64,000 bases of DNA from Octopus sinensis (taxonomy: Eukaryota), in NCBI RefSeq assembly GCF_006345805.1, contig NC_043013.1, forward strand, positions 31,496,001 to 31,560,000, written 5' to 3'. How positions within the stretch are numbered: position 1 is the first letter of the stretch; each line of letters starts with the position of its first letter. Positions 680 to 51,905 of this stretch are shown here, piece by piece. Position numbers and translations under genes: made by a program. Under the pieces are notes generated by a model. The model saw only the letters and a program-made list of their open reading frames with translations. It made no database searches and was not told the origin of the DNA.

Positions 680-1135
680 CTGTGATTCTTGATAAATTCA
701 TTAACAACCTGAACCGCTACAATATAAGACTGTCATTTTGCTTCTCATTCGGATTCCCTGATATTTTTCGCATGATTGTACCCTAAATCTCTTCACAAAA
801 CTGGATTATGAACTATAAGGACATACACATATTTTGTAAGTTCAAAACTTTTTCATCGGATCTCCAAAAAATCGAACTTATCTGCGATTCTTGTAAATTT
901 CAATAACAATCTGTTCCTCTACACGATATGACAGTTACTTTCCTTTTACTCAGACTTTCCTCTACATGATATGGAAGTCACTTTGCCTCTTACTCGGATT
1001 TTCAGAAATTTTGCATGACTGTATCCGAAAATTTCTTCACACAACTTGATCAAATATTCAATATGAGCTATATGTAGACATGCATAAATTCTATAGGTTT
1101 AAAACCTTTCATCGGATCTCCATGAATCGAATTTT
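680..1135. repeat. Degenerate tandem repeat (~200-240 bp unit, about 2 copies) upstream of a hammerhead
   Basis: Recurring blocks tgtgattcttgataaattcattaacaa / tgcgattcttgtaaatttcaataacaa and ttcatcggatctcca (about 853-866 and 1108-1122). Confidence 0.5.
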
Positions 1136-1206
1136 CTTCAATGCAGCTAATCTTACAACCTCTTTTGTATCTACCCCTTTTGATGTTTGGGAATTCTCTG
1201 ATGTTT

Positions 1207-1294
1207 TTTCGGCTGACGAGTACGAGCCATCTGTATTCACTGCATTTTTTGTAGCTTATTAAAGATGTCCTCGTACGAAACGATCGTACCGAGA
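1207..1294 (+). ncRNA. Type I hammerhead ribozyme, intact core
   Basis: Stem I UUUCGG(1207-1212)/CCGAGA(1289-1294). Core CUGACGA 1213-1219. Stem II GUACGAG/CUCGUAC. GAAA 1277-1280. Palindromic stem III CGAUCG. Predicted cleavage after GUA (1288). Confidence 0.88.
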
Positions 1295-1442
1295 TTTTAA
1301 TCCATTCTTGTTGCTTTTTTTCCTATTTGTAATCACCCCACTTGTCGTATGGTTAACACCATATAGATTTCCGGTGCATCCTAGTTAAGGACCATATTCA
1401 TGTGAATTCTTTAGAATTCACTAGAATCTCAATTACTTAACC

Positions 1443-1494
<52 letters not shown>

Positions 1495-1670
1495 AAGTCA
1501 AATTGCGATAAAATAAAATTAATTATTATCGCTGGTATTTCTAGCACAAGCCATATATTATTCATATATCAGTACATTAAGGCGAAATATGTGCTAGAAA
1601 CACAGAAGCTAGATAAATTTAGTGAAATGAAGATAAAAACATTTACTAACTCGGTTATATATATATATAT

Positions 1671-1820
1671 GACGGGCTTCTTTCCGATTCCGTCAACCAA
1701 ATCCACTCACAAGGCTTTGCTCGGCCCGAGGCTATAGTAGAAGACACTTGCCCAAGGTGCCGCGCTGTGGGACTGAACCCGGAACCGTGTGGTTGGAAAA
1801 CAAGCTTCTTAACACACACC
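1671..1820 (-). mobile_element. tRNA-derived SINE family A, head only
   Basis: Reverse complement matches the head of the copies at 37981 and 57929 (ttccgggttcagtccca...ccttgggcaagtgtcttctactatagcctcggg). Confidence 0.85.
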
Positions 1821-2745: not shown

Positions 2746-3066
2746 AGATATGCTTATGCATGTGTTGTGGGATCAATATCTGCAAGTCTTTACTTTAGAT
2801 ATACGACAATTTATATTTATTATATTTAAACATTTATGCAATGTGTGATGTGAGGCATTCATTATTAACTCTTACTTATACACGAAATAATTCATAATTT
2901 CTATAATAAATGAGTATACATTGTATACACTGAAAAAATTACAAAAACAATAGTAAAGGAAATATGATTATATATGTATATCTGTATGTGTATAATGTTT
3001 TTATGCATGTTTACATATATATATATATATATATATACATATACAGACACACACACACATATATAC

Positions 3067-3107
<41 letters not shown>

Positions 3108-3225
3108 CAATTTAGGAATGGCCTAGACAGGCCATTCGTCCACTAGAAGAGCAGCCATAACTCCAACCGCCAAGTAGTGTAATTCGGAAATAAGGTGAAA
3201 ATTTAAAAACATTTACCCTAATTCA

Positions 3226-3326
3226 TCTTTTATACGATGCATCGTTTCAGTGTCTTTAATGATAGACCAGCTTAATTAAATTAAATTAAGCTAGTCTACC
3301 ATAGGTCACACTTCATCAGTAAAAGA
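3226..3326 (-). ncRNA. Type I hammerhead ribozyme (array copy L1)
   Basis: On the minus strand: UCUUUUA-CUGAUGA-AGUGU...ACACU-GAAA-CGAUGCAUCG-UA|UAAAAGA. Confidence 0.92.
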
Positions 3327-3699
3327 AACCTGGGAGAGACGATATATCCGAGGCGACTGTATCAATGCCTCGGGAATATCTGTCTTAAAATTTTCAAGAC
3401 CAACGCATTCGCGCCAAACTTATCGGCAGCAAATATAAACTGCCGATTCAATCTCAGAATTAGTCAGAAAATTATCAATTAATCAATTTAGGGTAGCAAA
3501 AAATTCAGTAAAAATTTATCGCTACCAGCGGCCCAATGGAAAAGAGAAAATAGTCAAAGACTAAATATGTATAAATATAACAATTTAGGAATGGCCTAGA
3601 CAGGCCATTCGTCCACTAGAAAGAGCAGCCATAACTCCAACCGCCAAGTAGTGTAATTCGGAAATAAGGTGAAAATTTAAAAACATTTACCCTAATTCA

Positions 3700-3800
3700 T
3701 CTTTTATACGATGCATCGTTTCAGTGTCTTTAATGATAGACCAGCTTAATTAAATTAAATTAAGCTAGTCTACCATAGGTCACACTTCATCAGTAAAAGA
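3700..3800 (-). ncRNA. Type I hammerhead ribozyme (array copy L2)
   Basis: Same motif as L1; tcatcag at 3787-3793. Confidence 0.92.
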
Positions 3801-4171
3801 AACCTGGGAGAGACGGATATATCCGAGGCGACTGTATCAATGCCTCGGGAATATCTGTCTTAAAATTTTCAAGACCAACGCATTCGCGCCAAACTTATCG
3901 GCAGCAAATATAAACTGCCGATTCAATCTCAGAATTAGTCAGAAAATTATCAATTAATCAATTAGGGTAGCAAAAAATTCAGTAAAAATTTATCGCTACC
4001 AGCGGCCCAATGGAAAAGAGAAAATAGTCAAAGACTAAATATGTATAAATATAACAATTTAGGAATGGCCTAGACAGGCCATTCGTCCACTAGAAAGAGC
4101 AGCCATAACTCCAACCGCCAAGTAGTGTAATTCGGAAATAAGGTGAAAATTTAAAACATTACCCTAATTCA

Positions 4172-4270
4172 TCTTTTATACGATGCATCGTTTCAGTGTC
4201 TTTAATGATAGACCAGCTTAATTAATTAAATTAGCTAGTCTACCATAGGTCACACTTCATCAGTAAAAGA
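4172..4270 (-). ncRNA. Type I hammerhead ribozyme (array copy L3)
   Basis: Same motif; tcatcag at 4257-4263. Confidence 0.9.
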
Positions 4271-4848
4271 AAACTGGGAGAGACGGATATATCCGAGGCG
4301 ACTGTATCAATGCCTCGGGAATATCTGTCTTAAAATTTTCAAGACCAACGCATTCGCGCCAAACTTATCGGCAGCAAATATAAACTGCGATTCAATCTCA
4401 GAATTAGTCAGAAAATTATCAATTAATCATTTAGGGTAGCAAAAAATTCAGTAAAAATTTATCGCTACCAGCGGCCCAATGGAAAAGAGAAAATAGTCAA
4501 AGACTAAATATGTATAAATATAACAATTTAGGAATGGCCTAGACAGGCCATTCGTCCACTAGAAAGAGCAGCCATAACTCCAACCGCCAAGTAGTGTAAT
4601 TTATACATATTTAGTCTTTGACTATTTTCTCTTTTCCATTGGGCCGCTGGTAGCGATAAATTTTTACTGAATTTTTTGCTACCCTAAATTGATTAATTGA
4701 TAATTTTCTGACTAATTCTGAGATTGAATCGGCAGTTTATATTTGCTGCCGATAAGTTTGGCGCGAATGGTTGGTCTTGAAAATTTTAAGACAGATATTC
4801 CCGAGGCATTGATACAGTCGCCTCGGATATATCCGTCTCTCCCAGGTT

Positions 4849-4947
4849 TCTTTTACTGATGAAGTGTGACCTATGGTAGACTAGCTTAATTTAATTAATT
4901 AAGTGGTCTATCATTAAAGACACTGAAACGATGCATCGTATAAAAGA
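4849..4947 (+). ncRNA. Type I hammerhead ribozyme (array copy R1)
   Basis: Stem I TCTTTTA 4849-4855 / TAAAAGA 4941-4947. CTGATGA 4856-4862. GAAA 4925-4928. Cleavage after GTA (4940). Confidence 0.92.
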
Positions 4948-5322
4948 TGAATTAGGGTAAATGTTTTTAAATTTTCACCTTATTTCCGAATTACACTACT
5001 TGGCGGTTGGAGTTATGGCTGCTCTTTCTAGTGGACGAATGGCCTGTCTAGGCCATTCCTAAATTGTTATTATTTATACATATTTAGTCTTTGACTATTT
5101 TCTCTTTTCCATTGGGCCGCTGGTAGCGATAAATTTTTACTGAATTTTTTGCTACCCTAAATTGATTAATTGATAATTTTCTGACTAATTCTGAGATTGA
5201 ATCGGCAGTTTATATTTGCTGCCGATAAGTTTGGCGCGAATGCGTTGGTCTTGAAAATTTTAAGACAGATATTCCCGAGGCATTGATACAGTCGCCTCGG
5301 ATATATCCGTCTCTCCCAGGTT

Positions 5323-5423
5323 TCTTTTACTGATGAAGTGTGACCTATGGTAGACTAGCTTAATTTAATTTAATTAAGCTGGTCTATCATTAAAGACACT
5401 GAAACGATGCATCGTATAAAAGA
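5323..5423 (+). ncRNA. Type I hammerhead ribozyme (array copy R2)
   Basis: CTGATGA 5330-5336. GAAA 5401-5404. Cleavage after 5416. Confidence 0.92.
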
Positions 5424-5791
5424 TGAATTAGGGTAAAGTTTTTAAATTTTCACCTTATTTCCGAATTACACTACTTGGCGGTTGGAGTTATGGCTGCTCT
5501 TTCTAGTGGACGAATGGCCTGTCTAGGCCATTCCTAAATTGTTATATTATACATATTTAGTCTTTGACTATTTTCTCTTTTCCATTGGGCCGCTGGTAGC
5601 GATAAATTTTTACTGATTTTTTGCTACCCTAAATTGATTAATTGATAATTTTCTGACTAATTCTGAGATTGAATCGGCAGTTTATATTTGCTGCCGATAA
5701 GTTTGGCGCGAATGCGTTGGTCTTGAAAATTTTAGACAGATATTCCCGAGGCATTGATACAGTCGCCTCGATATATCCGTCTCTCCAGGTT

Positions 5792-5892
5792 TCTTTTACT
5801 GATGAAGTGTGACCTATGGTAGACTAGCTTAATTTAATTTAATTAAGCTGGTCTATCATTAAAGACACTGAAACGATGCATCGTATAAAAGA
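5792..5892 (+). ncRNA. Type I hammerhead ribozyme (array copy R3)
   Basis: CTGATGA 5799-5805. GAAA 5870-5873. Cleavage after 5885. Confidence 0.92.
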
Positions 5893-6108
5893 TGAATTAG
5901 GGTAAATGTTTTTAAATTTTCACCTTATTTCCGAATTACACTACTTGGCGGTTGGAGTTATGGCTGCTCTTTCTAGTGGACGAATGGCCTGTCTAGGCCA
6001 TTCCTAAATTGTTATATTTATACATATTTAGTCTTTGACTATTTTCTCTTTTCCATTGGGCCGCTGGTAGCGATAAATTTTTACTGAATTTTTTGCTACC
6101 CTAAATGA

Positions 6109-6177
<69 letters not shown>

Positions 6178-6244
6178 ATGTATGTATGTATATGTATGTA
6201 TGTATACATGCAGATAAACCTAACACACACATATGTATATATAT

Positions 6245-6760
6245 AATACACAGAAAATGTAGAATTCTTGCACAAAATGAAGAATATATTTATTATAATA
6301 GTCAATTCTTGTGCCCTACGTGGTTTATGACTTAAATATTTATGCAATTAAATTGCATTATGAATTTGACAAAGCAAAAAATCTTCATAAGGGCAATATC
6401 GGATGGAGAGCTTCGGCCAATTGAATTGTATCATGAGCGTCTTGGATTCTGTCCTGAAAATAGCAGGAGGTTGATTTTGACGTAATTGGTCGAAATTTTT
6501 AGAAAATAATTGAAGACGCACATTCTCCAATTGAATTGGAATGAACTCTCCAACGATTAAGATGTGAAAGAAATAACAGTCGATTTTTGCCCTGATGAAG
6601 GTTTTTACTTTTTATATTCATAATCTAATTCAATTCCATAAATATGGATTTAAGTGAAGAACCGAAACGCGCGTAGGCAACATGAATTGACTATTATAAT
6701 AAATATATTGATTATTCTGTGTATGCATTCCCCATTTTCTTTGTATTGTTAATTTTTTCT
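6245..6760 (+). mobile_element. PLE-like relic with a hammerhead-bearing 3' end and an inverted upstream copy of that end
   Basis: Perfect 26-bp inverted repeat 6283-6308 / 6684-6709, extending imperfectly into the HHR. 6356-6420 translates HYEFDKAKNLHKG, weakly like a PLE GIY-YIG C-terminus. Confidence 0.55.
6587..6680 (+). ncRNA. Type I hammerhead ribozyme with an extra A after A9
   Basis: Stem I UUGCC/GGCAA. CUGAUGA 6592-6598. Stem II GGUUUUUAC/GUGAAGAACC. GAAA 6664-6667. Palindromic CGCGCG. Cleavage after GUA (6675). Confidence 0.85.
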
Positions 6761-8511: not shown

Positions 8512-8674
8512 ATAAGAGTGGCTGTGTCGTCAGTAGCTTGCTTACCAACAACATGTTGCCAACTTGGGCAAGTGTCTTCTACTATAGACTCAGGCCGACC
8601 AAAGCCTTGTGAGTCCATATGGTAGACTAAAACTGAAAGAAGCCCGTCGTATATATGCATATATATATATATAT

Positions 8675-20796: not shown

Positions 20797-23700
20797 TATC
20801 TAGATAGGATACTGTGTAGGACAGTAGACAAGGATAACTTAGGATGTCCACAATTCCACACAGTCAGCTACACGGATCACAAATTGGTGACGTGTACGCT
20901 AGACTTAGATAAGGCACATAGACAGGGTCCTGGGTACTGGAAACTGAACGCATCATTCCCGTCCAGACAAGTTTTCAGAGACCGGATTAGCACACTAGTA
21001 AAGAGGGCTTTGACGGGAGCCATCATCAACAACAAATGGTGGTTTGCCCTCAAGAGAGCAGTAAAAGCAGAAGCGATTAGGTACAGCAAAGCACTAGCCA
21101 TAGATAGAAATAGAGTAGAGGGTGAGCTAGTTAAGAAGCTAGAAGAGGCAATTAGAAGCGGCATCGCATCCGACGTTTTGGCGGCGAGGTTGGCCCTCGA
21201 CCAACACTTCAACGCCAAACACGAAGGATGCTGTCAGCTAGGATGCGTGCTCTAAGGAACGAAGGTGTTGGAGCCGCGAGAGAGGCCCGGGTGGCAGAGG
21301 CGCAACAGGGCAACAAAGCCACCATTCGGTCACTGGTAGATGAACAGGGGCGCGAATTGCTCGAGCCAAGTAAAATGTTGAGGCCTTTCAGCAGCATTTT
21401 GCCCGACTGTTCGGGACGAGTGGAGGGCAAGAACGTAGGGTAACTTCAGTGCCTACCTACATAGCCTGCCACGACTCTCGACAAGAAAGGCAGGGTGCTG
21501 CGAAGGTGCCATCACGGCGGCGGAAGTGCGGGAAGCGATGGCAGAATGCTCGAGGGACAAATCACCGGGTTTGGATGGTCTACCCTACGAATTTTACTAT
21601 TGTATGTCAGACTTGTTTGGAGACGTCTTGGCAGCGGTATACTGCAACTGGCAGCAAACCGGGAGCATACCCGGTTTTGTGAGTCGAGGAGCTGTAACTC
21701 TGCTGAAGAAAGATCCAAACAAGAGAAACATTATACATAACTTTAGGCCAATCACTCTGCTCAATGCAGACCTGAAAATTTTGACAAAGGTGTTAGCCAA
21801 GAGGTTGGCGCTTGTCATGGAGAAACTGGTCGACAACGCACAAACGTGCGCCGTGCCGGGCCGGAGCATCCATGACAACCTCCATCTGATGCGCTACATC
21901 ATAGACAGGGTAGTTAACGAACCTGGCATGGGTGGGGCCCTGATCAACTTGGATCAATCGAAAGCCTTTGATAGGGTAGACCATCGATACTTGGAGGCAA
22001 TCCTGAGAGCGGCTGGTTTCGGTCCCGTCTTCCGCGGCTGGATAGCTGCCTTGTACAGAGGCATCCGTTCGGTAATTCGCGTAAATGGACATCTATCGAG
22101 ACCCCTCGACATTGCACGTTCGGTCCGTCAGGGATGCCCCCTCTCGGCGCTTCTATACGTATTGACTCTTGAGCCACTACTGCGGAAGCTGGCGACTCTG
22201 AGGGGCATCCCGCGAGAATTAGGATGCGGGACGAGCGTGTCTGCATACGCGGACGACGTCACCGTCATAGTGTCAAGCTACGAGCACATCGAGCGGGTCG
22301 GCGAGACACTGAAAGACTACGAAGCGGTGACAGGAGCAAAAATCAACCGGGAAAAGTCAGTGGGCTTGCGGCTCGGCACCTGGAGAAGCAAGCCCATGCC
22401 GTCCACCAGTACCTCCGTCGTGGACGCTGGACAGACGGCCCGGTTGAGTTGCTCGGGTCTGGTTCGGTCCGGACCTCCAAATGGAGAAGAACTGGAACGA
22501 GATAACGAGTAGGGTGGTCACTCTCGCCCAGCAATGGGCCGAGAGGAAACTGTCCCTAAAAGGTCGGGCGGAGGTGGTGAACGCGTACATCGCGTCCATC
22601 ATCTACTACCGCCTGACCGTCGTACCTTGTCCCGACCCTACCATCACCAAACTAGAACGCATCCTCTTCCGCTTCTTGTGGAAAGGATGCGTCCCGATGG
22701 TCAGGCGATCCATTTGCTGTCAACACCCGTTAAAAGGAGGGCTGGGCATGCCGTGGTTGATGATGCGCAGACACGCGCTGAGACTGCGACATCTCCGGCT
22801 CTATGTAGACGACGGTGAACAGGTGTGGTCGCCGTTTGTGAGGCACGCATTCCCGCAACTCGTCTCCATGACCGAACTACAGTCGTGGATCAAAAGAGGC
22901 CGAAGAAGGGCGAATGGCACCGCGAGTGTCGCGTTGCTCTCAAGCAACTCTGCCGTCCCGGGTCGACCTTGAGTGACTTCAACACAACCAAAGCATTCTA
23001 TAGGGGATTAGTGGAGGGGCGGTACGACGACGAGCTCGGGGCAAACCTGGACGAGGAATACCTGACCCGCCTGTTTCAAACGACTTTCGGCCCGGGACCT
23101 ATGGACAACTTCCAGAGATCCCTGGCCTGGCGGTGCTACCGAGAAGCGCTACCCGTTCGGGATAAGCTCTATAGGCATGGCTCGAGAAACACGGGGCCGA
23201 CCTGCCCGAGATGCGGGCAGAGCGACGAAACCGCTCTGCACGCAATCGTGCAGTGTCCAGCAATTTCCCACCTGTGGGCTTATGTCGAACGACTGCTGTC
23301 ACGTGTGGGACGTGTCGGTTTATCAGCCGAGTCTATCGTTAATATCGTCACGCCTCCTTCCTTCAAACGGGAAGGAAGAGCTATTTTTATCATACTTGTG
23401 GCTATGGCGAAAGAATGTATCTGGTGGACGCGTCTGAAGGATTAGAGACAAACACTTTCCTCTCTGGTCAATCTCTCATCAACTTCTTCAAGTATCACTT
23501 GAAGAAAAAAGTGAGAGTAAGAGGCAAGTTTTGTCTAGTGAATGTTTTAAAAAAAGATGGGTGAATGTAGCAAGGATGGCACGTATGAATGACGAAGCCA
23601 CCTTGACTATGATTCTATGAACCGTAAAAATTAATACAGAGAGTTGCTTATTTGCAAAAAAAAAAAAGAAATATAACATGTGACTTCATTGACCGAGGTT

Positions 23701-31185: not shown

Positions 31186-31500
31186 GGATGGATGGATGGA
31201 TATATGGATAGATAAATAGATAGATACACATAATGTGGCTATGGTCGTTTTGACTGCTTCTTCTTGTGTGTAAAATTACCTGATATAAGGTAGTTTCTAT
31301 TGTGTTTAAATGTACACTATCATATATATATATCTATATATATATGTACGACTGGCTTGTTTCAGTTTCCGTCTCAAATCCACTCACAAGACCTTGGTCA
31401 GCCAAAGGCTATGGTAGAGAACAATTGGCCAGTTTGCTACGCAATGCTACAGACCCTAGAACCATGTTGCTCGGAAGGAAACTTCTTGCAACACAGCCAC
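30790..31500 (-). mobile_element. Degenerate SINE family A with an expanded internal (GATA)n tract
   Basis: Tail remnant about 30790-30960, head remnant about 31345-31500. Confidence 0.6.
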
Positions 31501-32135
31501 ACCAATGCCTCTGCGCGCACGCGTGTACGTCTGTGTCTGTGATTGTGTGTGTGTGTGTGTGTGCTTGTGTGTGAAATATGTTTTCTCCATCGTTATTCAA
31601 TTGAGTGTACTAACTTAAATGTGTCTGTTTTCCAGAAATGATATCCCCTGTGATAATTTTTCTGAATGTTTCAAAACAAATTGTCTGCTAACTTCTGTAG
31701 TAGCCTATTCAATATATAAGAACAGTCCCTATGCTCATCTTATTAACGTAAAGCTGTTACAGATGTGTAGTTAGGTAAAGTTACTTATTACACTATATAC
31801 CAATCTTTAAAATGCTTACACAAACTATTGTGAAATATTAACGTTCGGAATATAGATATTATCAGCGTCGAATTGTTGTGTCGTCTATTGATTTTCTGCA
31901 TCATTCCAAATGTAGCGTAATCCATGCGTCTGCTTAAACTTTTCACAGAAATATATACAATATATGTATTGGATACTCATTTCTTATTTGTAGCTATACA
32001 ACTCAGCACACACGAACACAAACATACACACACACACTCACACATACACAAGTGATCATGCATGCATATACACACATACATACACACATATATGTGCTAA
32101 TACAAACGTGCACACATACATATACACAAACATAT

Positions 32136-33453: not shown

Positions 33454-34191
33454 GGATGTATGTATACATCTTGAATCTTGAGTCACTCGCTTGATATTAA
33501 CAAAACTATACCTCTGCTCACATTGTGAGTTCTATTTCCCCTGCTCACATCAATATACCTGCATATATAAATATATATATATATTTACATATACACATAG
33601 CAAGGTTTCTGAAGGTGAACCGTAAGCGAATAGCTAAATATATAGTTTTGTCTGATCTCATTTTGCAGGTGTGCAAATCATGACTACTGCTGTGTCTAAA
33701 CTTCCAAATACAACATTGCCTAATGCAGGAATCGATTAAGTTATCGTGAAAAAAAAACAATCGATATTCAAAACAAAAATCGCTAATGGACTTAGACACT
33801 TTAAGAAATTTCCTAAAATTGCTAAACAAACACTTTACCAAATACTCCCGGAAAGTTGTTATAAACGGCACTCTCTGAAATCTAATAGTTACGTGACCGG
33901 ATTCTTGATTAAAGTAAAATAATGCATATGTTCAAAACCTATATGTTACGTATATACGTATCATTCATTAAAACAACATAAAGAGGATTCGTGTCAGCAC
34001 GTAATCTATAAAATTACTGATACAACTAAATCCACCTACATGGTTTTCCATATTATGTACACATGCAGACACACATATATAGACACGCAGATACATATAC
34101 ATACCCTATTACACACATAAAGGCGTATACACACACGTATATCTATATATATATCTATATATCTATCTATCTATCTATCTATCTATATATA

Positions 34192-34236
<45 letters not shown>

Positions 34237-34370
34237 ATAAATATTAGGGAATAAATCCAAATTTACAGGGAAAAAAATCAGATTTAGGATTAAATCCAAT
34301 TTTATAGTAAAATATTATAAAATATTATTAGAGACAAAACCACTATTTTAATAAATAGTCAAAAAAACCG

Positions 34371-34413
34371 CCACTACAATCGTTTCTTGTCTTGATCGAC
34401 AATCTTCAGGTGG
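34371..34413 (-). ncRNA. Minimal type I hammerhead ribozyme
   Basis: Minus strand: CCAC-CUGAAGA-UUGUC(GAUCAA)GACAA-GAAA-CGAUUG-UA|GUGG. Enclosed by a perfect 32-bp inverted repeat 34318-34349 / 34476-34507. Confidence 0.82.
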
Positions 34414-34499
34414 ACTTCCAATAAGTCAGTTTCATAATTTTATGTATTGATTAAGTCTTTCCTTGTTTGTTTTGCAAAATAGTGGTTTTGTCTCTAATA

Positions 34500-34530
<31 letters not shown>

Positions 34531-36511: not shown

Positions 36512-36689
36512 CTGCTGTTGACAGATGATCCGTAGCCCGCCTTCTTTCATTCTCTTCTTTCTTCACACTGGGCGCCCAGTAATCCGGTCGCCAAAAATTT
36601 CTCTGACTTGTTATATGCCGTTTTCTATATCCTTCGGGATTTCTACTAAGCGTTACCCAACATCCTTGTCTTTTGAGCCCTAACCCTAT

Positions 36690-37430
36690 CTTGCTCCTAT
36701 TTATTTCGTGTTTGAAGAAGATTTGATTTGGTTTATCTCCAACGAGAAAAATTTCGATCAAAAATTCAACAGAAAAAATGACAGAGGGTTATATGCAGAA
36801 CTTTCTGATGTTCCAAGTGTTATGCATACAAAATTTCCTGCAACTGTTATGGTTTTAGGATTTGTCAGCAATGAAGGACATGTGATGCCTCCTTACTTCT
36901 TTCTACAAAACCTTGGAGTTAACTCTGTCGCCTACTTTGTGCTCCTGGAAATAGCTGTTAAGCCCTGGATAGACAGTGTATGCAATCGAAGGCTATATTT
37001 GTTTTAGTAAGACTCTGCACTATCACACATGGCTCTAGTAACGCGGAAATGTGTAGCTGAAAATTTTCATGATCACATAACCCCTAACATTTGGCCTCCT
37101 AATACCCCAGATCTCAATCCATTGGGCTATTACATGTGGAGCGTTGTTGGTAGAGAGGTAAATGAACACGCCCATAACACCAAGAAATCTATGAAAGCTA
37201 CCATAGTCAGAGTAATGTCCAAAATGAACCAGACCACTTGATTCGAGCATGTAGATGATTTAGATCTCGTGTAGAAGTAGATGCTGAGCTGAAGGTGCTT
37301 TATTGAATAACATTATAGAGAAGAAGGTTTATTTAAATACTCATAGCGTTTTTTGATAAATAAAGTTATATGTTATTACATGTTCGTTTCTTTTTTTATA
37401 AATATAAATATGTCCTCAAATATCTTCGAA
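36690..37430 (+). mobile_element. Tc1/mariner-superfamily DD37D (maT-like) transposase relic
   Basis: SNEKNF..VMHTKFPATVMVLGFVSNEGHVMPP..VKPWI..; *DSALSH..WPPNTPDLNPLGYYMW (catalytic Asp motifs decayed). Confidence 0.85.
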
Positions 37431-37938
37431 CACGGTATGTGTGCGTGTGTTCGTTTCTTTATGTATGTAAGTATGTGTATATGTACGTGTGTGTGCATGT
37501 CAGTGTCAATGGATGTCAATGCGTTGATAGTGTCTATATGCAGTCTGTGTACTTCTATGCATATACATGTATCATGTTTACAGTAGATGCAGGGTCGTAT
37601 CGCACGGCCAGACTTTTACCTCTTGCATCCAAAGAGTTTTTAAGCCAATACTTACAACGTTTAAGGTAATACTTACAGAGAGCTTTATATGCGGCGGGAT
37701 TCATCTTTCTAAAAAAGGAATTATTTGACTTTCTCGAAGTACCTAAATTCTTATAATGTCAAGTACATACACACATGCATACTTATACACATACATACAG
37801 GTATAAATATATACATATTCAACCGCCCTCTCTCTCTCTCTCTCTCTCTCTCTTGATATATTTTTATATGTATAAAGTTTAATAAGGAACGGAGAAATAG
37901 AAGTGTAGATAGTTACTTCTTTCATATAGGCTTGTATG

Positions 37939-37973
<35 letters not shown>

Positions 37974-37980
37974 GTCTATA

Positions 37981-38143
37981 GGCGCAGGAGTGGCTGTGTG
38001 GTAAGTAGCTTGCTAACCAACCACACAGTTCCGGGTTCAGTCCCACTGCGTGGCACCTTGGGCAAGTGTCTTCTACTATAGCCTCGGGCCGACCAAAGCC
38101 TTGTGAGTGGATTTGGTAGACGGAAACTGAAAGAAGCCCGTCG

Positions 38144-38174
<31 letters not shown>

Positions 38175-38392
38175 GTGTGTGTGTGTCTGTGTTTGTCTCC
38201 CCAACATCGCTTGACAACCGATGCTGGTGTGTTTACGTCCCCGTTACTTAGCGGTTCGGCAAAAGAGACCGATAGGATAAGTACCAGGCTTACAAAGAAT
38301 AAGTCCTGGGGTCGATTTGCTCGACTAAAAAGGCGGTGCTCCAGCATGGCCGCAGTCAAATGACTGAAACAAGTAAAAGAGAAAAGAGAAAG
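37981..38392 (+). mobile_element. SINE family A, full length, young
   Basis: ggcgcaggagtggctgtgtggtaagtagcttgc..ccgggttcagtccca head, (TA)/(TG) middle, (gaaaa) tail. Confidence 0.92.
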
Positions 38393-51381: not shown

Positions 51382-51499
51382 ATCAAGATATCTATCTATA
51401 TATGTATGTGTGCGTGCTTGTGTGTAAGTATATATATATATATATATACCTTTGAGAAATCTCGAGTTGCACATGAGAAAGTAAGGAGGGATATCTAAT

Positions 51500-51905
51500 A
51501 TCTGTTATACTTCCAGAAGGGAAGGGCCTTCCTTTGACTCTGACATGCAATGTCTATGCAAGACCCTGCCTCAGTAAGGCCGGACTCATGAGTCATCTTC
51601 GTAGTCATGAAACGAGACAGATGAGTGACAACCTGGCCACTGGTGGTGGTGTAACACACCATACTAATCATGTCTGTCGGGCATGTGGAAGAGAGTGTAA
51701 TTCGGCAGGAGGACTTAAACGACATGCAAAGGTACATGAAGCCCAGTTACAGCTACAGCTGGCTATTACCAGTAAAGGTTTTTGTTGCCAATTTTGCACA
51801 AAAAATTGTAGATCTTTAGCTGGGCTAAAAAGTCACAGCACCAGTAGCAGTTAAGCTTCGTGCAATGACCATACTCGATAACGAGGGGGCAGCCATAATA
51901 ATAAT
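51500..51905 (+). mobile_element. RTE-type LINE 3' end encoding three C2H2-like fingers, with (ATA)n tail
   Basis: CNVYARPCLSKAGLMSHLRSH / CRACGRECNSAGGLKRHAKVH / CQFCTKNCRSLAGLKSH, then gaccatactcgataacgagggggcagcc-ataataata. Confidence 0.7.

What the first reader, a model, noticed from the sequence alone, without database searches (positions are those of the whole stretch)
3106..6111. Head-to-head, six-hammerhead tandem array in a (TA)n tract: a candidate octopus retrozyme with dual-ended insertion geometry
Seen: a ~473-bp non-coding monomer repeated ~3.2 times, then ~3.2 times inverted. The arms join at a 3-bp ATT microhomology (4599-4601), with (TA)n on both outer flanks. Each full monomer holds one complete type I HHR (CUGAUGA, GAAA, 7-bp stem I, GUA site). 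HHRs are on the minus strand in the left arm and the plus strand in the right arm, so both RNA 3' ends point outward. Established: PLE pseudo-LTRs carry type I HHRs with palindromic stem III, and metazoan non-LTR retrozymes are tandem HHR monomers that yield circular RNAs. Inference: tandem copies with arbitrary start and stop phases are what reverse transcription round a circular template would produce. The outward 3' ends suggest that both strands of the self-complementary (TA)n target primed cDNA, which was then joined head to head. I am not aware of this having been described for cephalopods, but cannot check the literature here.
Basis: partly seen in the sequence, partly recalled or inferred. 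Interest (0 to 1): 0.92.

Follow-up and report, generated by a model that had tools for sequence, protein, structure and literature searches.

The report
Half-inverted hammerhead-ribozyme repeat array in (TA)n
A 3-kb block of six near-identical 475-bp non-coding repeats, each carrying a hammerhead self-cleaving RNA motif, sits in a (TA)n microsatellite with one half flipped, and this looks like a single "twin-primed" retrotransposition of a known kind of ribozyme-bearing parasite (a retrozyme), not a new kind of element.

Summary
Window 3106-4601 and 4599-6111 are two ~3.2-unit tandem arrays of one 475-bp non-coding monomer in opposite orientation. They join at a 3-nt ATT overlap, and (TA)n abuts both outer ends. 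Each of six units has a complete type I hammerhead motif with a palindromic helix III. My descriptor found none in 200 shuffled windows, though Rfam's model does not score it.

The outer end of the left arm and the inner start of the right arm are exactly contiguous on the monomer. The locus is therefore one continuous ~6.4-unit template whose 5' half is inverted, which is the signature of twin priming as proposed for L1.

Tandem plus inverted 5'-truncated copies and a (TA)n insertion bias are published hallmarks of Penelope-like elements. Rolling-circle reverse transcription of circular RNA is the published retrozyme model. Two other hammerhead-bearing elements in the window also lie next to (TA)n.

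Verdict: a likely non-LTR retrozyme, probably mobilised by a Penelope-like element. It is a new member of a known kind with an unusually clean integration scar. Self-cleavage, circular RNA, read support and the octopus origin remain untested.

The parts
3015..3105 (.). Left flanking (TA)n-rich microsatellite. The pure (TA) run 3069-3105 abuts the array. 4-5 nt (TATAT) are shared with monomer nt 128-132.
3106..4601 (-). Left arm: about 3.17 units, ribozyme sense on the minus strand. In sense direction it runs from monomer nt 49 (at 4601) to nt 128-132 (at 3106-3102). This is the inverted 5' half of the template.
3226..3326 (-). Hammerhead motif L-outer. Cleavage GUA| falls between 3233 and 3232.
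3700..3800 (-). Hammerhead motif L-middle. Cleavage falls between 3707 and 3706.
4172..4270 (-). Hammerhead motif L-inner. Cleavage falls between 4179 and 4178. The distal helix II hairpin has 2 single-base deletions.
4599..4601 (.). Head-to-head junction: the 3-nt ATT overlap between monomer nt 49-51 (antisense) and nt 131-133 (sense). No (TA)n remains here.
4599..6111 (+). Right arm: about 3.21 units, ribozyme sense on the plus strand, from monomer nt 131 to nt 229. This is the direct 3' half of the template.
4849..4947 (+). Hammerhead motif R-inner. Cleavage falls after 4940. The distal helix II has 2 single-base deletions, one shared with L-inner.
5323..5423 (+). Hammerhead motif R-middle. 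Cleavage falls after 5416. This copy was folded.
5792..5892 (+). Hammerhead motif R-outer. Cleavage falls after 5885.
6112..6206 (.). Right flanking (TA)n microsatellite. The array ends ...GATTAAT|ATATAT with about 2 nt of possible microhomology.

Best explanation
The locus is a genomic copy of a non-autonomous, non-coding retroelement of the metazoan non-LTR retrozyme kind: a 475-nt unit with a type I hammerhead that is predicted to act as a double (dimeric) hammerhead. Shown: one continuous template of about 6.4 units is present, its 5' 3.17 units are inverted, and none of the four ends lies at the ribozyme cleavage site. Inferred mechanism, step 1: an endonuclease, most likely the GIY-YIG nuclease of a Penelope-like element (PLE), cut a (TA)n tract. 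Step 2: one DNA 3' end primed reverse transcription at monomer nt ~229 and copied back 3.2 units. Step 3: the other DNA end annealed through TATAT microhomology at nt 128-132 of the same RNA, which was either a circle copied round and round or an uncleaved multimer, and copied a further 3.2 units. Step 4: the two cDNA 3' ends were joined through the 3-nt ATT overlap. This is twin priming, as proposed for L1 5' inversions, and it gives the tandem-plus-inverted architecture typical of PLE insertions. Inferred life cycle, from published work on retrozymes: transcription, hammerhead cleavage, circularisation by a tRNA ligase, then reverse transcription in trans.
For: Array structure. Joining the sense left arm (ending at 3104) to the right arm (starting at 4599) restores the consensus monomer at 80/80 positions; about 8 of 475 offsets would allow this, so chance is about 2%. 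Neither arm can be copied from the other: the left arm starts at nt 49 and the right arm reaches nt 229. No (TA)n is left at the centre. The flanks are not mirrored. Hammerhead: 6 array hits against 0 in 200 shuffles. The catalytic fold is 1 kcal/mol above the MFE of the isolated motif. Two copies cofold into a double hammerhead with a 12-bp helix III (-89.9 versus 2 x -37.6 kcal/mol). All three helices appear in the MFE of the full 476-nt monomer. The sense strand folds to -152 kcal/mol (z -8.6) and the antisense to -118 (z -5.2). A second hammerhead with the same architecture lies at 1207-1294: a 47-nt loop-2 insertion and GAAACGAUCGUA. It scores as Rfam Hammerhead_1 at 21.4 bits, E 0.0028. 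Helices I and II differ completely among the three motifs in the window yet all stay paired. The copies differ by 1 substitution, 19 single-base deletions and 1 insertion in 3009 nt, nearly all singletons. Literature: PLE tandem/inverted insertions and (TA)n bias (PMC8557442); retrozymes as PLE derivatives (10.64898/2026.07.22.740005); the twin-priming model (PMC10760644; 10.1101/2024.12.14.628481); circular RNA copied as multimers (PMC7761336).
Against: Rfam's hammerhead models give no hit on the array motif. The 10.1-11.1 pair is A-U, not the usual G-C, and helix II carries a ~60-nt extension, so activity is unproven. Only one locus of this family is visible: there is no other copy in the window and none in the searchable collections. 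No PLE ORF is in the window, and homology of the monomer to a PLE pseudo-LTR could not be tested. (TA)n tracts are common here at 4.8% of bases. The two innermost copies share one deletion in the helix II hairpin, which hints at mirror copying or gene conversion. The near-equal arm lengths are unexplained. No target-site duplication can be read in (TA)n. The indel-dominated differences suggest a noisy long-read consensus, and I have no reads to confirm the junction.
Confidence: 0.55

Rival explanations
1. Post-insertion DNA inversion. A single head-to-tail array of about 6.4 units, however it formed, later had its left half inverted. One break fell exactly at the array/(TA)n boundary and the other at monomer nt 130/131, repaired by microhomology.
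For: It predicts the same contiguity of breakpoints. The (TA)n tract and the monomer's TTATAT segment are both self-complementary, which could favour such an exchange.
Against: A break anywhere inside the ~36-nt (TA) run would have carried TA units to the centre junction, and none are there. It needs a second rare event, whereas inverted 5' copies are reported as frequent products of PLE integration itself (PMC8557442).
Confidence: 0.2
2. Fold-back inverted duplication. One arm was copied from the other, either at the DNA level (hairpin-capped break, template switch) or by snap-back self-priming of the cDNA, and the ends were trimmed later.
For: The arms are nearly equal (1496 versus 1513 nt, three hammerheads each). 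The innermost copies share one T deletion in the helix II hairpin. A 91-nt perfect inverted repeat with a 79-nt spacer sits at the centre (I21).
Against: Neither arm is contained in the other. The left arm begins 82 nt earlier in phase, the right arm extends about 100 nt further, and the flanks beyond (TA)n are not mirrored. It leaves the exact phase contiguity (about 2% by chance) unexplained.
Confidence: 0.07
3. Assembly artefact. A chimeric or palindromic long read, or a mis-oriented unitig, created the head-to-head join in what is really a simple direct array.
For: Differences between copies are almost all single-base deletions in homopolymers, the error profile of a lightly polished long-read consensus. 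Craig et al. note that such PLE structures cause assembly problems.
Against: Fold-back read chimeras give arms symmetric about the join, whereas here the inner ends are at nt 49 and nt 131. Both flanks continue into different unique sequence. The inverted segment's boundaries fall precisely at the array edge and at a microhomology, as a biological event would produce.
Confidence: 0.08
4. Two independent insertions of the same element into one (TA)n tract in opposite orientation. Both breakpoints were drawn to the monomer's most TA-like segment by microhomology with the target.
For: Both contiguous breakpoints lie in TTATATTTATAC, the most (TA)n-like stretch of the monomer. The family appears to favour (TA)n.
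Against: The second insertion would have to land exactly at the first element's boundary and leave no TA unit between them. It needs two hits in a ~70-nt target. The right arm's outer end is not in a TA-like site, so the microhomology constraint is weak.
Confidence: 0.04
5. Ordinary satellite DNA whose hammerhead-like motif is inactive or irrelevant. The array grew by unequal crossing-over, and RNA plays no part.
For: There is no Rfam hit on the array motif. The 10.1-11.1 pair is A-U. No expression data are available.
Against: The motif does not arise in shuffles. The same helix III signature and the same pairing scheme appear in three unrelated sequence contexts in this window, one of them scored by Rfam. 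The sense strand is 34 kcal/mol more stable than the antisense. Unequal crossing-over does not make a half-inverted array embedded in (TA)n.
Confidence: 0.06

Closest known systems
Metazoan non-LTR retrozymes (Cervera & de la Pena 2020, PMC7229834; review PMC7761336)
   Same: [quoted passage not shown] One type I hammerhead per unit, with a weak or palindromic helix III that favours dimeric cleavage. A strongly self-paired monomer in which helix I brings the two ends together. The published model has circular RNA reverse-transcribed into multimers.
   Different: At 475 bp the monomer is above the sizes given by Cervera and de la Pena (150-450 bp repeats), though Li et al. 2026 report family consensuses of 51-972 bp. 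Helix II carries a ~60-nt extension (5 bp, a 5x5 internal loop, then a 19-bp hairpin). The 10.1-11.1 pair is A-U. No loop1-loop2 tertiary motif is evident. The host appears to be a cephalopod-like mollusc, for which the searched literature describes no retrozyme. Expression and circularity are untested here.
Penelope-like element insertions: pseudo-LTRs with hammerheads, complex tandem/inverted structures, microsatellite targets (Craig et al. 2021, PMC8557442; Cervera & de la Pena 2014, PMC4209133)
   Same: Partial tandems plus an inverted 5'-truncated copy abutting the 5' end. A (TA)n target, as reported for Naiads. Type I hammerheads with a palindromic 15.2-16.2/loop 3 region, a long helix II and dimeric action.
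   Different: There is no RT/GIY-YIG ORF here or elsewhere in the window. Naiads, the clade with documented (TA)n bias in cephalopods, lack canonical hammerheads. The two outer ends are at different phases, not at one defined 3' terminus. No 30-40-bp 'tail' was recognised.
L1 5'-inversion by twin priming (Ostertag & Kazazian 2001, as summarised in PMC10760644 and 10.1101/2024.12.14.628481)
   Same: An inverted 5' segment joined to a direct 3' segment. The two are adjacent on the template, joined by microhomology, with both sense 3' ends pointing outward.
   Different: The template is periodic (a circle or a multimer). There is no poly(A). The probable enzyme is a PLE RT/GIY-YIG, not L1 ORF2p. 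The target-site duplication is unreadable in (TA)n.
Hammerhead-bearing satellite DNAs: newt satellite 2, Schistosoma Sm-alpha, Dolichopoda pDo500 (~500 bp; PMC2837043)
   Same: Tandem units of about 330-500 bp with a type I hammerhead. Double-hammerhead models apply. pDo500 shows compensatory changes even at 10.1-11.1.
   Different: Those are large genomic arrays. This is a short ~6.4-unit insertion with defined edges and a half inversion.

Membership tests
Type I hammerhead ribozyme | Conserved core C3 U4 G5 A6 N7 G8 A9 ... G12 A13 A14, the A15.1-U16.1 pair, and H17 at the cleavage site | tested here: met
   CUGAUGA ... GAA A...U A| is present and identical in all six units.
Type I hammerhead ribozyme | Three helices flush with the core, with helix I open (type I topology) | tested here: met
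   Helix I is 7 bp. Helix II is 5 bp plus a 19-bp distal hairpin. Helix III is A-U plus CGA/UCG with a UGCA loop. The descriptor gives 0 hits in 200 shuffled windows. All helices appear in the MFE of the full monomer.
Type I hammerhead ribozyme | Match to the curated covariance model (Rfam RF00163 or its clan) | tested here: not met
   There is no hit at the gathering score or at E<=10, even on a 126-nt slice. A sister motif at 1207-1294 scores 21.4 bits, E 0.0028, below the gathering score of 34.
Type I hammerhead ribozyme | G10.1-C11.1 pair, highly conserved in canonical and PLE hammerheads | tested here: not met
   The pair is A10.1-U11.1, or equivalently an extra A-U pair inserted before G-C. 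Compensatory variation at this pair is reported in pDo500 (PMC2837043).
Type I hammerhead ribozyme | Site-specific self-cleavage | not testable with these tools
   This needs in vitro transcription of monomer and dimer constructs.
Metazoan non-LTR retrozyme | [quoted passage not shown] 2026), non-coding, GC <50%, no LTR/PBS/PPT | tested here: met
   The unit is 475 bp with 36% GC. The longest open frame is 62 codons. The array is tandem.
Metazoan non-LTR retrozyme | A type I hammerhead in every repeat | tested here: met
   All six cleavage-site-containing units have an intact motif. This holds at motif level only.
Metazoan non-LTR retrozyme | Expression as linear and circular monomeric RNA | not testable with these tools
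   No transcriptome is available. Folding shows only that helix I juxtaposes the monomer's ends.
Metazoan non-LTR retrozyme | Dispersed multi-copy family in the genome | tested here: inconclusive
   There is no other copy in the 64-kb window. None was found in the metagenome or viral collections or via ORF look-ups. The host genome itself is not searchable here.
PLE-type insertion (non-autonomous) | Partial tandem copies with an inverted 5'-truncated copy abutting the 5' end | tested here: met
   compared with the description in PMC8557442.
PLE-type insertion (non-autonomous) | Insertion into a microsatellite, (TA)n for Naiads | tested here: met
   (TA)n abuts both ends, against a background of 4.8% of bases in such tracts. 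Two further hammerhead elements lie next to (TA)n. The rough joint chance is about 8e-4.
PLE-type insertion (non-autonomous) | 30-40-bp 'tail' extension at one end | tested here: inconclusive
   Nothing recognisable at the array ends. The small element at 34246-34514 has a 39-nt inverted terminal copy, which may or may not be the same thing.
PLE-type insertion (non-autonomous) | Sequence homology of the unit to a pseudo-LTR of an autonomous PLE | not testable with these tools
   No repeat library or host genome is available. No RT/GIY-YIG ORF is in the window.
Twin-primed insertion | The inverted 5' segment and the direct 3' segment are adjacent on the template | tested here: met
   Joining the sense left arm ending at 3104 to position 4599 restores the consensus at 80/80 positions.
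Twin-primed insertion | Microhomology at the inversion junction and at the internal priming site | tested here: met
   ATT (3 nt) at the centre, and TATAT (4-5 nt) between the left (TA)n and monomer nt 128-132.
Twin-primed insertion | Target-site duplication or deletion flanking the whole insertion | tested here: inconclusive
   Both flanks are (TA)n, so any duplication is invisible.

The most novel reading that the evidence does not exclude
The locus may be an intact molecular fossil of one retrotransposition event. In that reading, a circular (or uncleaved multimeric) hammerhead RNA was reverse-transcribed for more than six unit lengths from both ends of a break in (TA)n. That would be twin-primed, rolling-circle, target-primed reverse transcription. 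It would be sequence-level evidence for how animal retrozymes integrate. It would tie them to the (TA)n-targeting, tandem/inverted-producing machinery of Penelope-like elements. It would do so in a cephalopod-like genome where retrozymes are undescribed, and with a hammerhead variant that has a ~60-nt helix II extension and an A-U 10.1-11.1 pair.
Probability: 0.45. Interest if true: 0.6.

Novelty: new member of a known kind. Interest (0 to 1): 0.45.

Why it matters
Animal retrozymes are assumed to move through circular RNA and a borrowed reverse transcriptase. The papers read here do not describe their insertion junctions: the 2020 NAR paper contains no mention of inverted copies, microsatellites or target sites. 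The link to Penelope-like elements rests on co-occurrence and pseudo-LTR homology.

This young insertion has exact template contiguity across an inversion. It has microhomologies at three junctions, and none of its ends lies at the ribozyme cleavage site. Together these give a concrete rule that can be counted genome-wide: the outer end of the inverted arm equals the inner start of the direct arm. That rule tests twin-primed integration at (TA)n and so tests the choice of helper element.

A head-to-head array would also yield a ~1.4-kb hairpin RNA if transcribed through from outside. That RNA could feed small-RNA silencing of the family (inference).

The value is incremental: the kind of element, the tandem/inverted geometry and the (TA)n preference are all already in the literature.

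Tried and rejected
- **Rfam scans.** I scanned the whole window at gathering thresholds, 2900-6300 at E<=10 and 5310-5435 at E<=10. None gave a hammerhead hit on the array, only chance miRNA-like hits on (TA/TG)n and the helix II hairpin. The motif at 34375-34409 is also unscored.
- **Fetching other copies through the protein collections.** An exact look-up of the 33-aa ORF in the monomer found nothing. A homology search with the 62-aa antisense frame found no candidate.
- **Exact-pattern scans.** Two 22-26-nt monomer strings had 0 hits in JGI metagenome contigs and one had 0 hits in IMG/VR.
- **Looking for a helper element.** Pfam on 28 open frames across the window found only a LINE-type RVT_1 plus zf-RVT, a DDE_3 remnant and a C2H2 fragment. 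There was no GIY-YIG or PLE reverse transcriptase.
- **Identifying the species.** The closest reverse-transcriptase relatives (77% and 75% identity) come from unnamed metagenome contigs. The best named one is a cuttlefish at 53%, so 'octopus' stays unverified.
- **Sampling a cuttlefish locus for related hammerheads.** This gave only unrelated minimal motifs, and I dropped it.
- **Models rejected.** A perfect palindrome or fold-back fails because the inner ends differ by 82 nt, the outer ends differ by ~100 nt and the flanks are not mirrored. Two unrelated cDNAs fail because of the phase contiguity. A coding element fails because there is no long ORF.
- **Twin-priming source.** The original Ostertag and Kazazian paper is not held in the library. 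I used secondary descriptions instead.
Full report
**What is there**

TRF reports two adjacent arrays of the same unit: 3092-4601 (period 474, 3.2 copies, 98% matches) and 4599-6113 (period 473, 3.2 copies). They are bracketed by (AT)n at 3015-3106 and 6112-6206. The repeat finder shows the two halves are reverse complements of each other, with arms up to 322 nt at 100% complementarity.

I cut all copies at the putative cleavage site and aligned them in one orientation. This gives a 475-nt consensus with 36% GC. The longest stop-free frame in a consensus tandem is 62 codons, so the unit is non-coding. No other copy exists in the 64-kb window, and the sequences beyond the two (TA)n tracts are unrelated to each other.

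**The hammerhead**

Every unit that includes the site reads:

UCUUUUA CUGAUGA AGUGU-[internal loop + 19-bp hairpin]-ACACU GAA ACGAUGCAUCGU A | UAAAAGA

- The full catalytic core is present, along with A15.1-U16.1, cleavage after GUA and a 7-bp helix I.
- Helix III is short, and its 10-nt core CGAUGCAUCG is a perfect palindrome.
- A simple type I descriptor finds the six array copies plus one more site in the real window. It finds none in 200 dinucleotide-preserving shuffles of the whole window.
- The isolated motif's MFE pairs part of the core with helix III. The catalytic fold is only 1 kcal/mol higher.
- Two copies cofold into the classical double hammerhead with a 12-bp intermolecular helix III (-89.9 versus 2 x -37.6 kcal/mol).
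- In the full 476-nt monomer the MFE contains all three helices, and helix I closes the molecule. The sense strand folds to -152 kcal/mol (z = -8.6). The antisense folds to -118 kcal/mol (z = -5.2), partly because the sense strand uses G-U pairs.

Three points count against the motif. Rfam's hammerhead models do not score it at all. The 10.1-11.1 pair is A-U, not the highly conserved G-C. Helix II carries a ~60-nt extension. Activity is therefore plausible but unproven.

**Independent support from the same window**

The descriptor's extra hit, at 1207-1294 (+), reads:

UUUCGG CUGACGA GUACGAG-[43 nt]-CUCGUAC GAA ACGAUCGU A | CCGAGA

It has the same architecture: a long loop-2 insertion, a palindromic helix III and a GUA site. 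It also has a canonical G10.1-C11.1 pair. Rfam Hammerhead_1 aligns it over the full model at 21.4 bits, E = 0.0028, below the gathering score because of the insertion.

A relaxed descriptor adds 34409-34375 (-):

CCAC CUGAAGA UUGUC-GAUCAA-GACAA GAA ACGAUUGU A | GUGG

About 0.04 such relaxed hits are expected per shuffled window.

The three motifs share GAAACGAU..YGUA. Helices I and II have entirely different sequences and remain fully paired. For example, pair 2.1-1.1 is A-U, G-C and C-G in the three motifs, and pair 10.1-11.1 is A-U, G-C and U-A. [quoted passage not shown]

**The phases are not arbitrary**

I number the consensus from the first base after the cleavage site.

| Arm | Direction read | Start | End |
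|---|---|---|---|
| Left (sense on minus strand) | centre to left | nt 49 | nt 128-132 |
| Right (sense on plus strand) | centre to right | nt 131-134 | nt 229 |

The uncertainty at each end is the bases shared with the neighbouring sequence: ATAT with the left (TA)n, and ATT at the centre. Joining the sense left arm ending at 3104 to position 4599 restores the consensus monomer at 80 of 80 positions. The same holds for 3102 joined to 4601. About 8 of 475 possible offsets would permit this, so the chance is about 2%.

The locus is therefore one continuous template of about 6.4 units whose 5' 3.17 units are inverted. In template coordinates: left flank, then the reverse complement of X..Y, then Y+1..end, then right flank.

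That is the signature for which twin priming was proposed in L1. [quoted passage not shown] A caught intermediate with adjacent template segments at the two ends has also been reported (10.1101/2024.12.14.628481).

Neither arm can have been copied from the other, because each contains phases the other lacks. This excludes a simple fold-back or palindromic read chimera. No TA unit is left at the centre. That argues against a later inversion with a break inside the TA tract, and against two separate insertions.

None of the four ends (nt 49, 130, 131, 229) coincides with the cleavage site. The template was therefore not a ribozyme-cut linear monomer. It was a circle or an uncleaved multimer.

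**Copy-to-copy differences**

Across 3009 nt there is 1 substitution, 19 single-base deletions (16 of them in runs of two or more identical bases) and 1 insertion. Virtually all are singletons. Ordinary decay would be dominated by substitutions. These differences look like long-read consensus errors or reverse-transcriptase slippage, so the units were essentially identical at birth and the insertion is young. The one shared variant is a T deletion in the helix II hairpin of the two innermost copies. It remains unexplained, and gene conversion between the inverted neighbours or a recurrent error are both possible.

**Context and target**

Perfect (TA)>=6 tracts cover 4.8% of the window, so landing in one by chance has a probability of about 0.05.

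The other two hammerhead elements also adjoin (TA)n:
- The 1207-1294 motif has a (TA)23 tract 158 nt 3' of its cleavage site. The chance of a tract within 160 nt in a given direction is about 0.20.
- The 34375-34409 motif sits in a ~270-nt element with (TA)n on both sides (chance about 0.08). Its end next to the (TA)n is a 39-nt inverted copy of an internal segment.

The rough joint chance is about 8e-4. This rests on three loci and is suggestive only.

No RT/GIY-YIG ORF is present in the window. The only reverse transcriptase is a decayed LINE (RVT_1 plus zf-RVT at 21.4-23.4 kb). Its best named relative is the cuttlefish Acanthosepion pharaonis at 53% identity. A cephalopod-like mollusc is plausible, and 'octopus' is unverified.

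**Comparison with what is known**

- Metazoan non-LTR retrozymes are low-GC tandem repeats of 150-450 bp, each with a type I hammerhead. [quoted passage not shown] The published model has the circle reverse-transcribed as multimers (PMC7761336).
- A 2026 preprint argues that they are non-autonomous derivatives of PLE pseudo-LTRs.
- Craig et al. 2021 describe PLE insertions as partial tandems, often with an inverted 5'-truncated copy at the 5' end. They report a strong microsatellite bias, (TA)n for Naiads, which occur in Octopus spp. They single out the tandem/inverted structures and the microsatellite bias as unexplained features of PLE integration.

What this locus adds:
- an exact twin-priming scar in a retrozyme array
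- a hammerhead variant with a long helix II and an A-U 10.1-11.1 pair
- a host group for which the searched literature describes no hammerhead repeats

One mismatch remains: Naiads lack canonical hammerheads. The helper could be another PLE clade, and Arkhipova's Neptune clade was also suggested to target microsatellites.

**Verdict**

The locus is most likely a young insertion of a non-LTR retrozyme. It was made in one event by target-primed reverse transcription from both ends of a break in (TA)n, probably by PLE enzymes (confidence about 0.55).

The rivals, in order, are a later DNA inversion of half the array (0.2), an assembly artefact (0.08), a fold-back duplication (0.07), an inert satellite (0.06) and two separate insertions (0.04).

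It is a new member of a known kind and of moderate interest. Its value lies in the countable rule it offers for testing the integration mechanism genome-wide.

Noticed in passing
window 1205-1296 (+), with (TA)n at 1445-1491: A solo type I hammerhead with core CUGACGA, a 7-bp helix II with G10.1-C11.1, a 43-47-nt loop-2 insertion, a palindromic helix III ACGAUCGU and a GUA| site after 1288. Rfam Hammerhead_1 scores it at 21.4 bits, E 0.0028, below the gathering score. A (TA)23 tract lies 158 nt downstream. Two copies are predicted to form a double hammerhead.
   Followed up: partly
window 34246-34514 (-), with (TA)n at 34506-34530 and 34184-34239: A ~270-nt element between two (TA)n tracts carries a minimal hammerhead-like motif (34409-34375; helix III CGAUUG is one C>U change from the palindrome). 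A 39-nt inverted copy (34514-34476 versus 34349-34312) abuts the (TA)n. This may be a miniature of the same tandem/inverted insertion geometry. Rfam does not score it.
   Followed up: partly
window 714-879 and 959-1134: A diverged direct repeat (71% identity, ~245-nt spacing) lies just upstream of the solo hammerhead at 1207-1294. It could be the remains of an older tandem element. No hammerhead was detected in these units.
   Followed up: no
window 21439-23442 (+): A decayed non-LTR retrotransposon: RVT_1 (E 1e-31) and zf-RVT (E 2e-8) are split over three overlapping frames. The closest relatives are unnamed metagenome contigs (75-77% identity). The best named one is the cuttlefish Acanthosepion pharaonis (53%).
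   Followed up: partly
window 3106-6111: Differences among the units are 19 single-base deletions (16 in homopolymer runs), 1 insertion and 1 substitution. This profile suggests residual long-read consensus errors in the assembly, or reverse-transcriptase slippage. Small indels elsewhere in this window should be treated with care.
   Followed up: partly
window 1656-1759 versus 8560-8665 (inverted, 86%); similar translated motifs at about 31300-31570 and 37880-38360; tRNA-like segments at 2400-2470 and 2640-2720: A multi-copy short interspersed repeat, SINE-like and possibly tRNA-derived, is scattered through the window, often next to microsatellites.
   Followed up: no
whole window: Microsatellite density is very high: 46 TRF arrays scoring >=100, about 24 of them (TA)n. 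Perfect (TA)>=6 tracts cover 4.8% of bases. (TAGA)n, (TATG)n and (TAA)n arrays are also common. This sets the background for any claim of (TA)n targeting.
   Followed up: yes
window 36684-37238 (+) and 51477-51851 (+): There is a weak DDE_3 (Tc1/mariner-type transposase) remnant (E 0.005) and an open frame with C2H2 zinc-finger matches below the gathering score. Both are probably decayed.
   Followed up: no
L003 14832-14864 (-) (Acanthosepion pharaonis contig CAHIKZ030005532.1): A compact hammerhead-like motif (UCACA CUGAUGA GCUGU-GAU-ACAGC GAA AUAGUCUGU C|UGUGG) lies 3 kb from a LINE reverse transcriptase in the cuttlefish genome. It is unrelated in sequence to the array motif.
   Followed up: no
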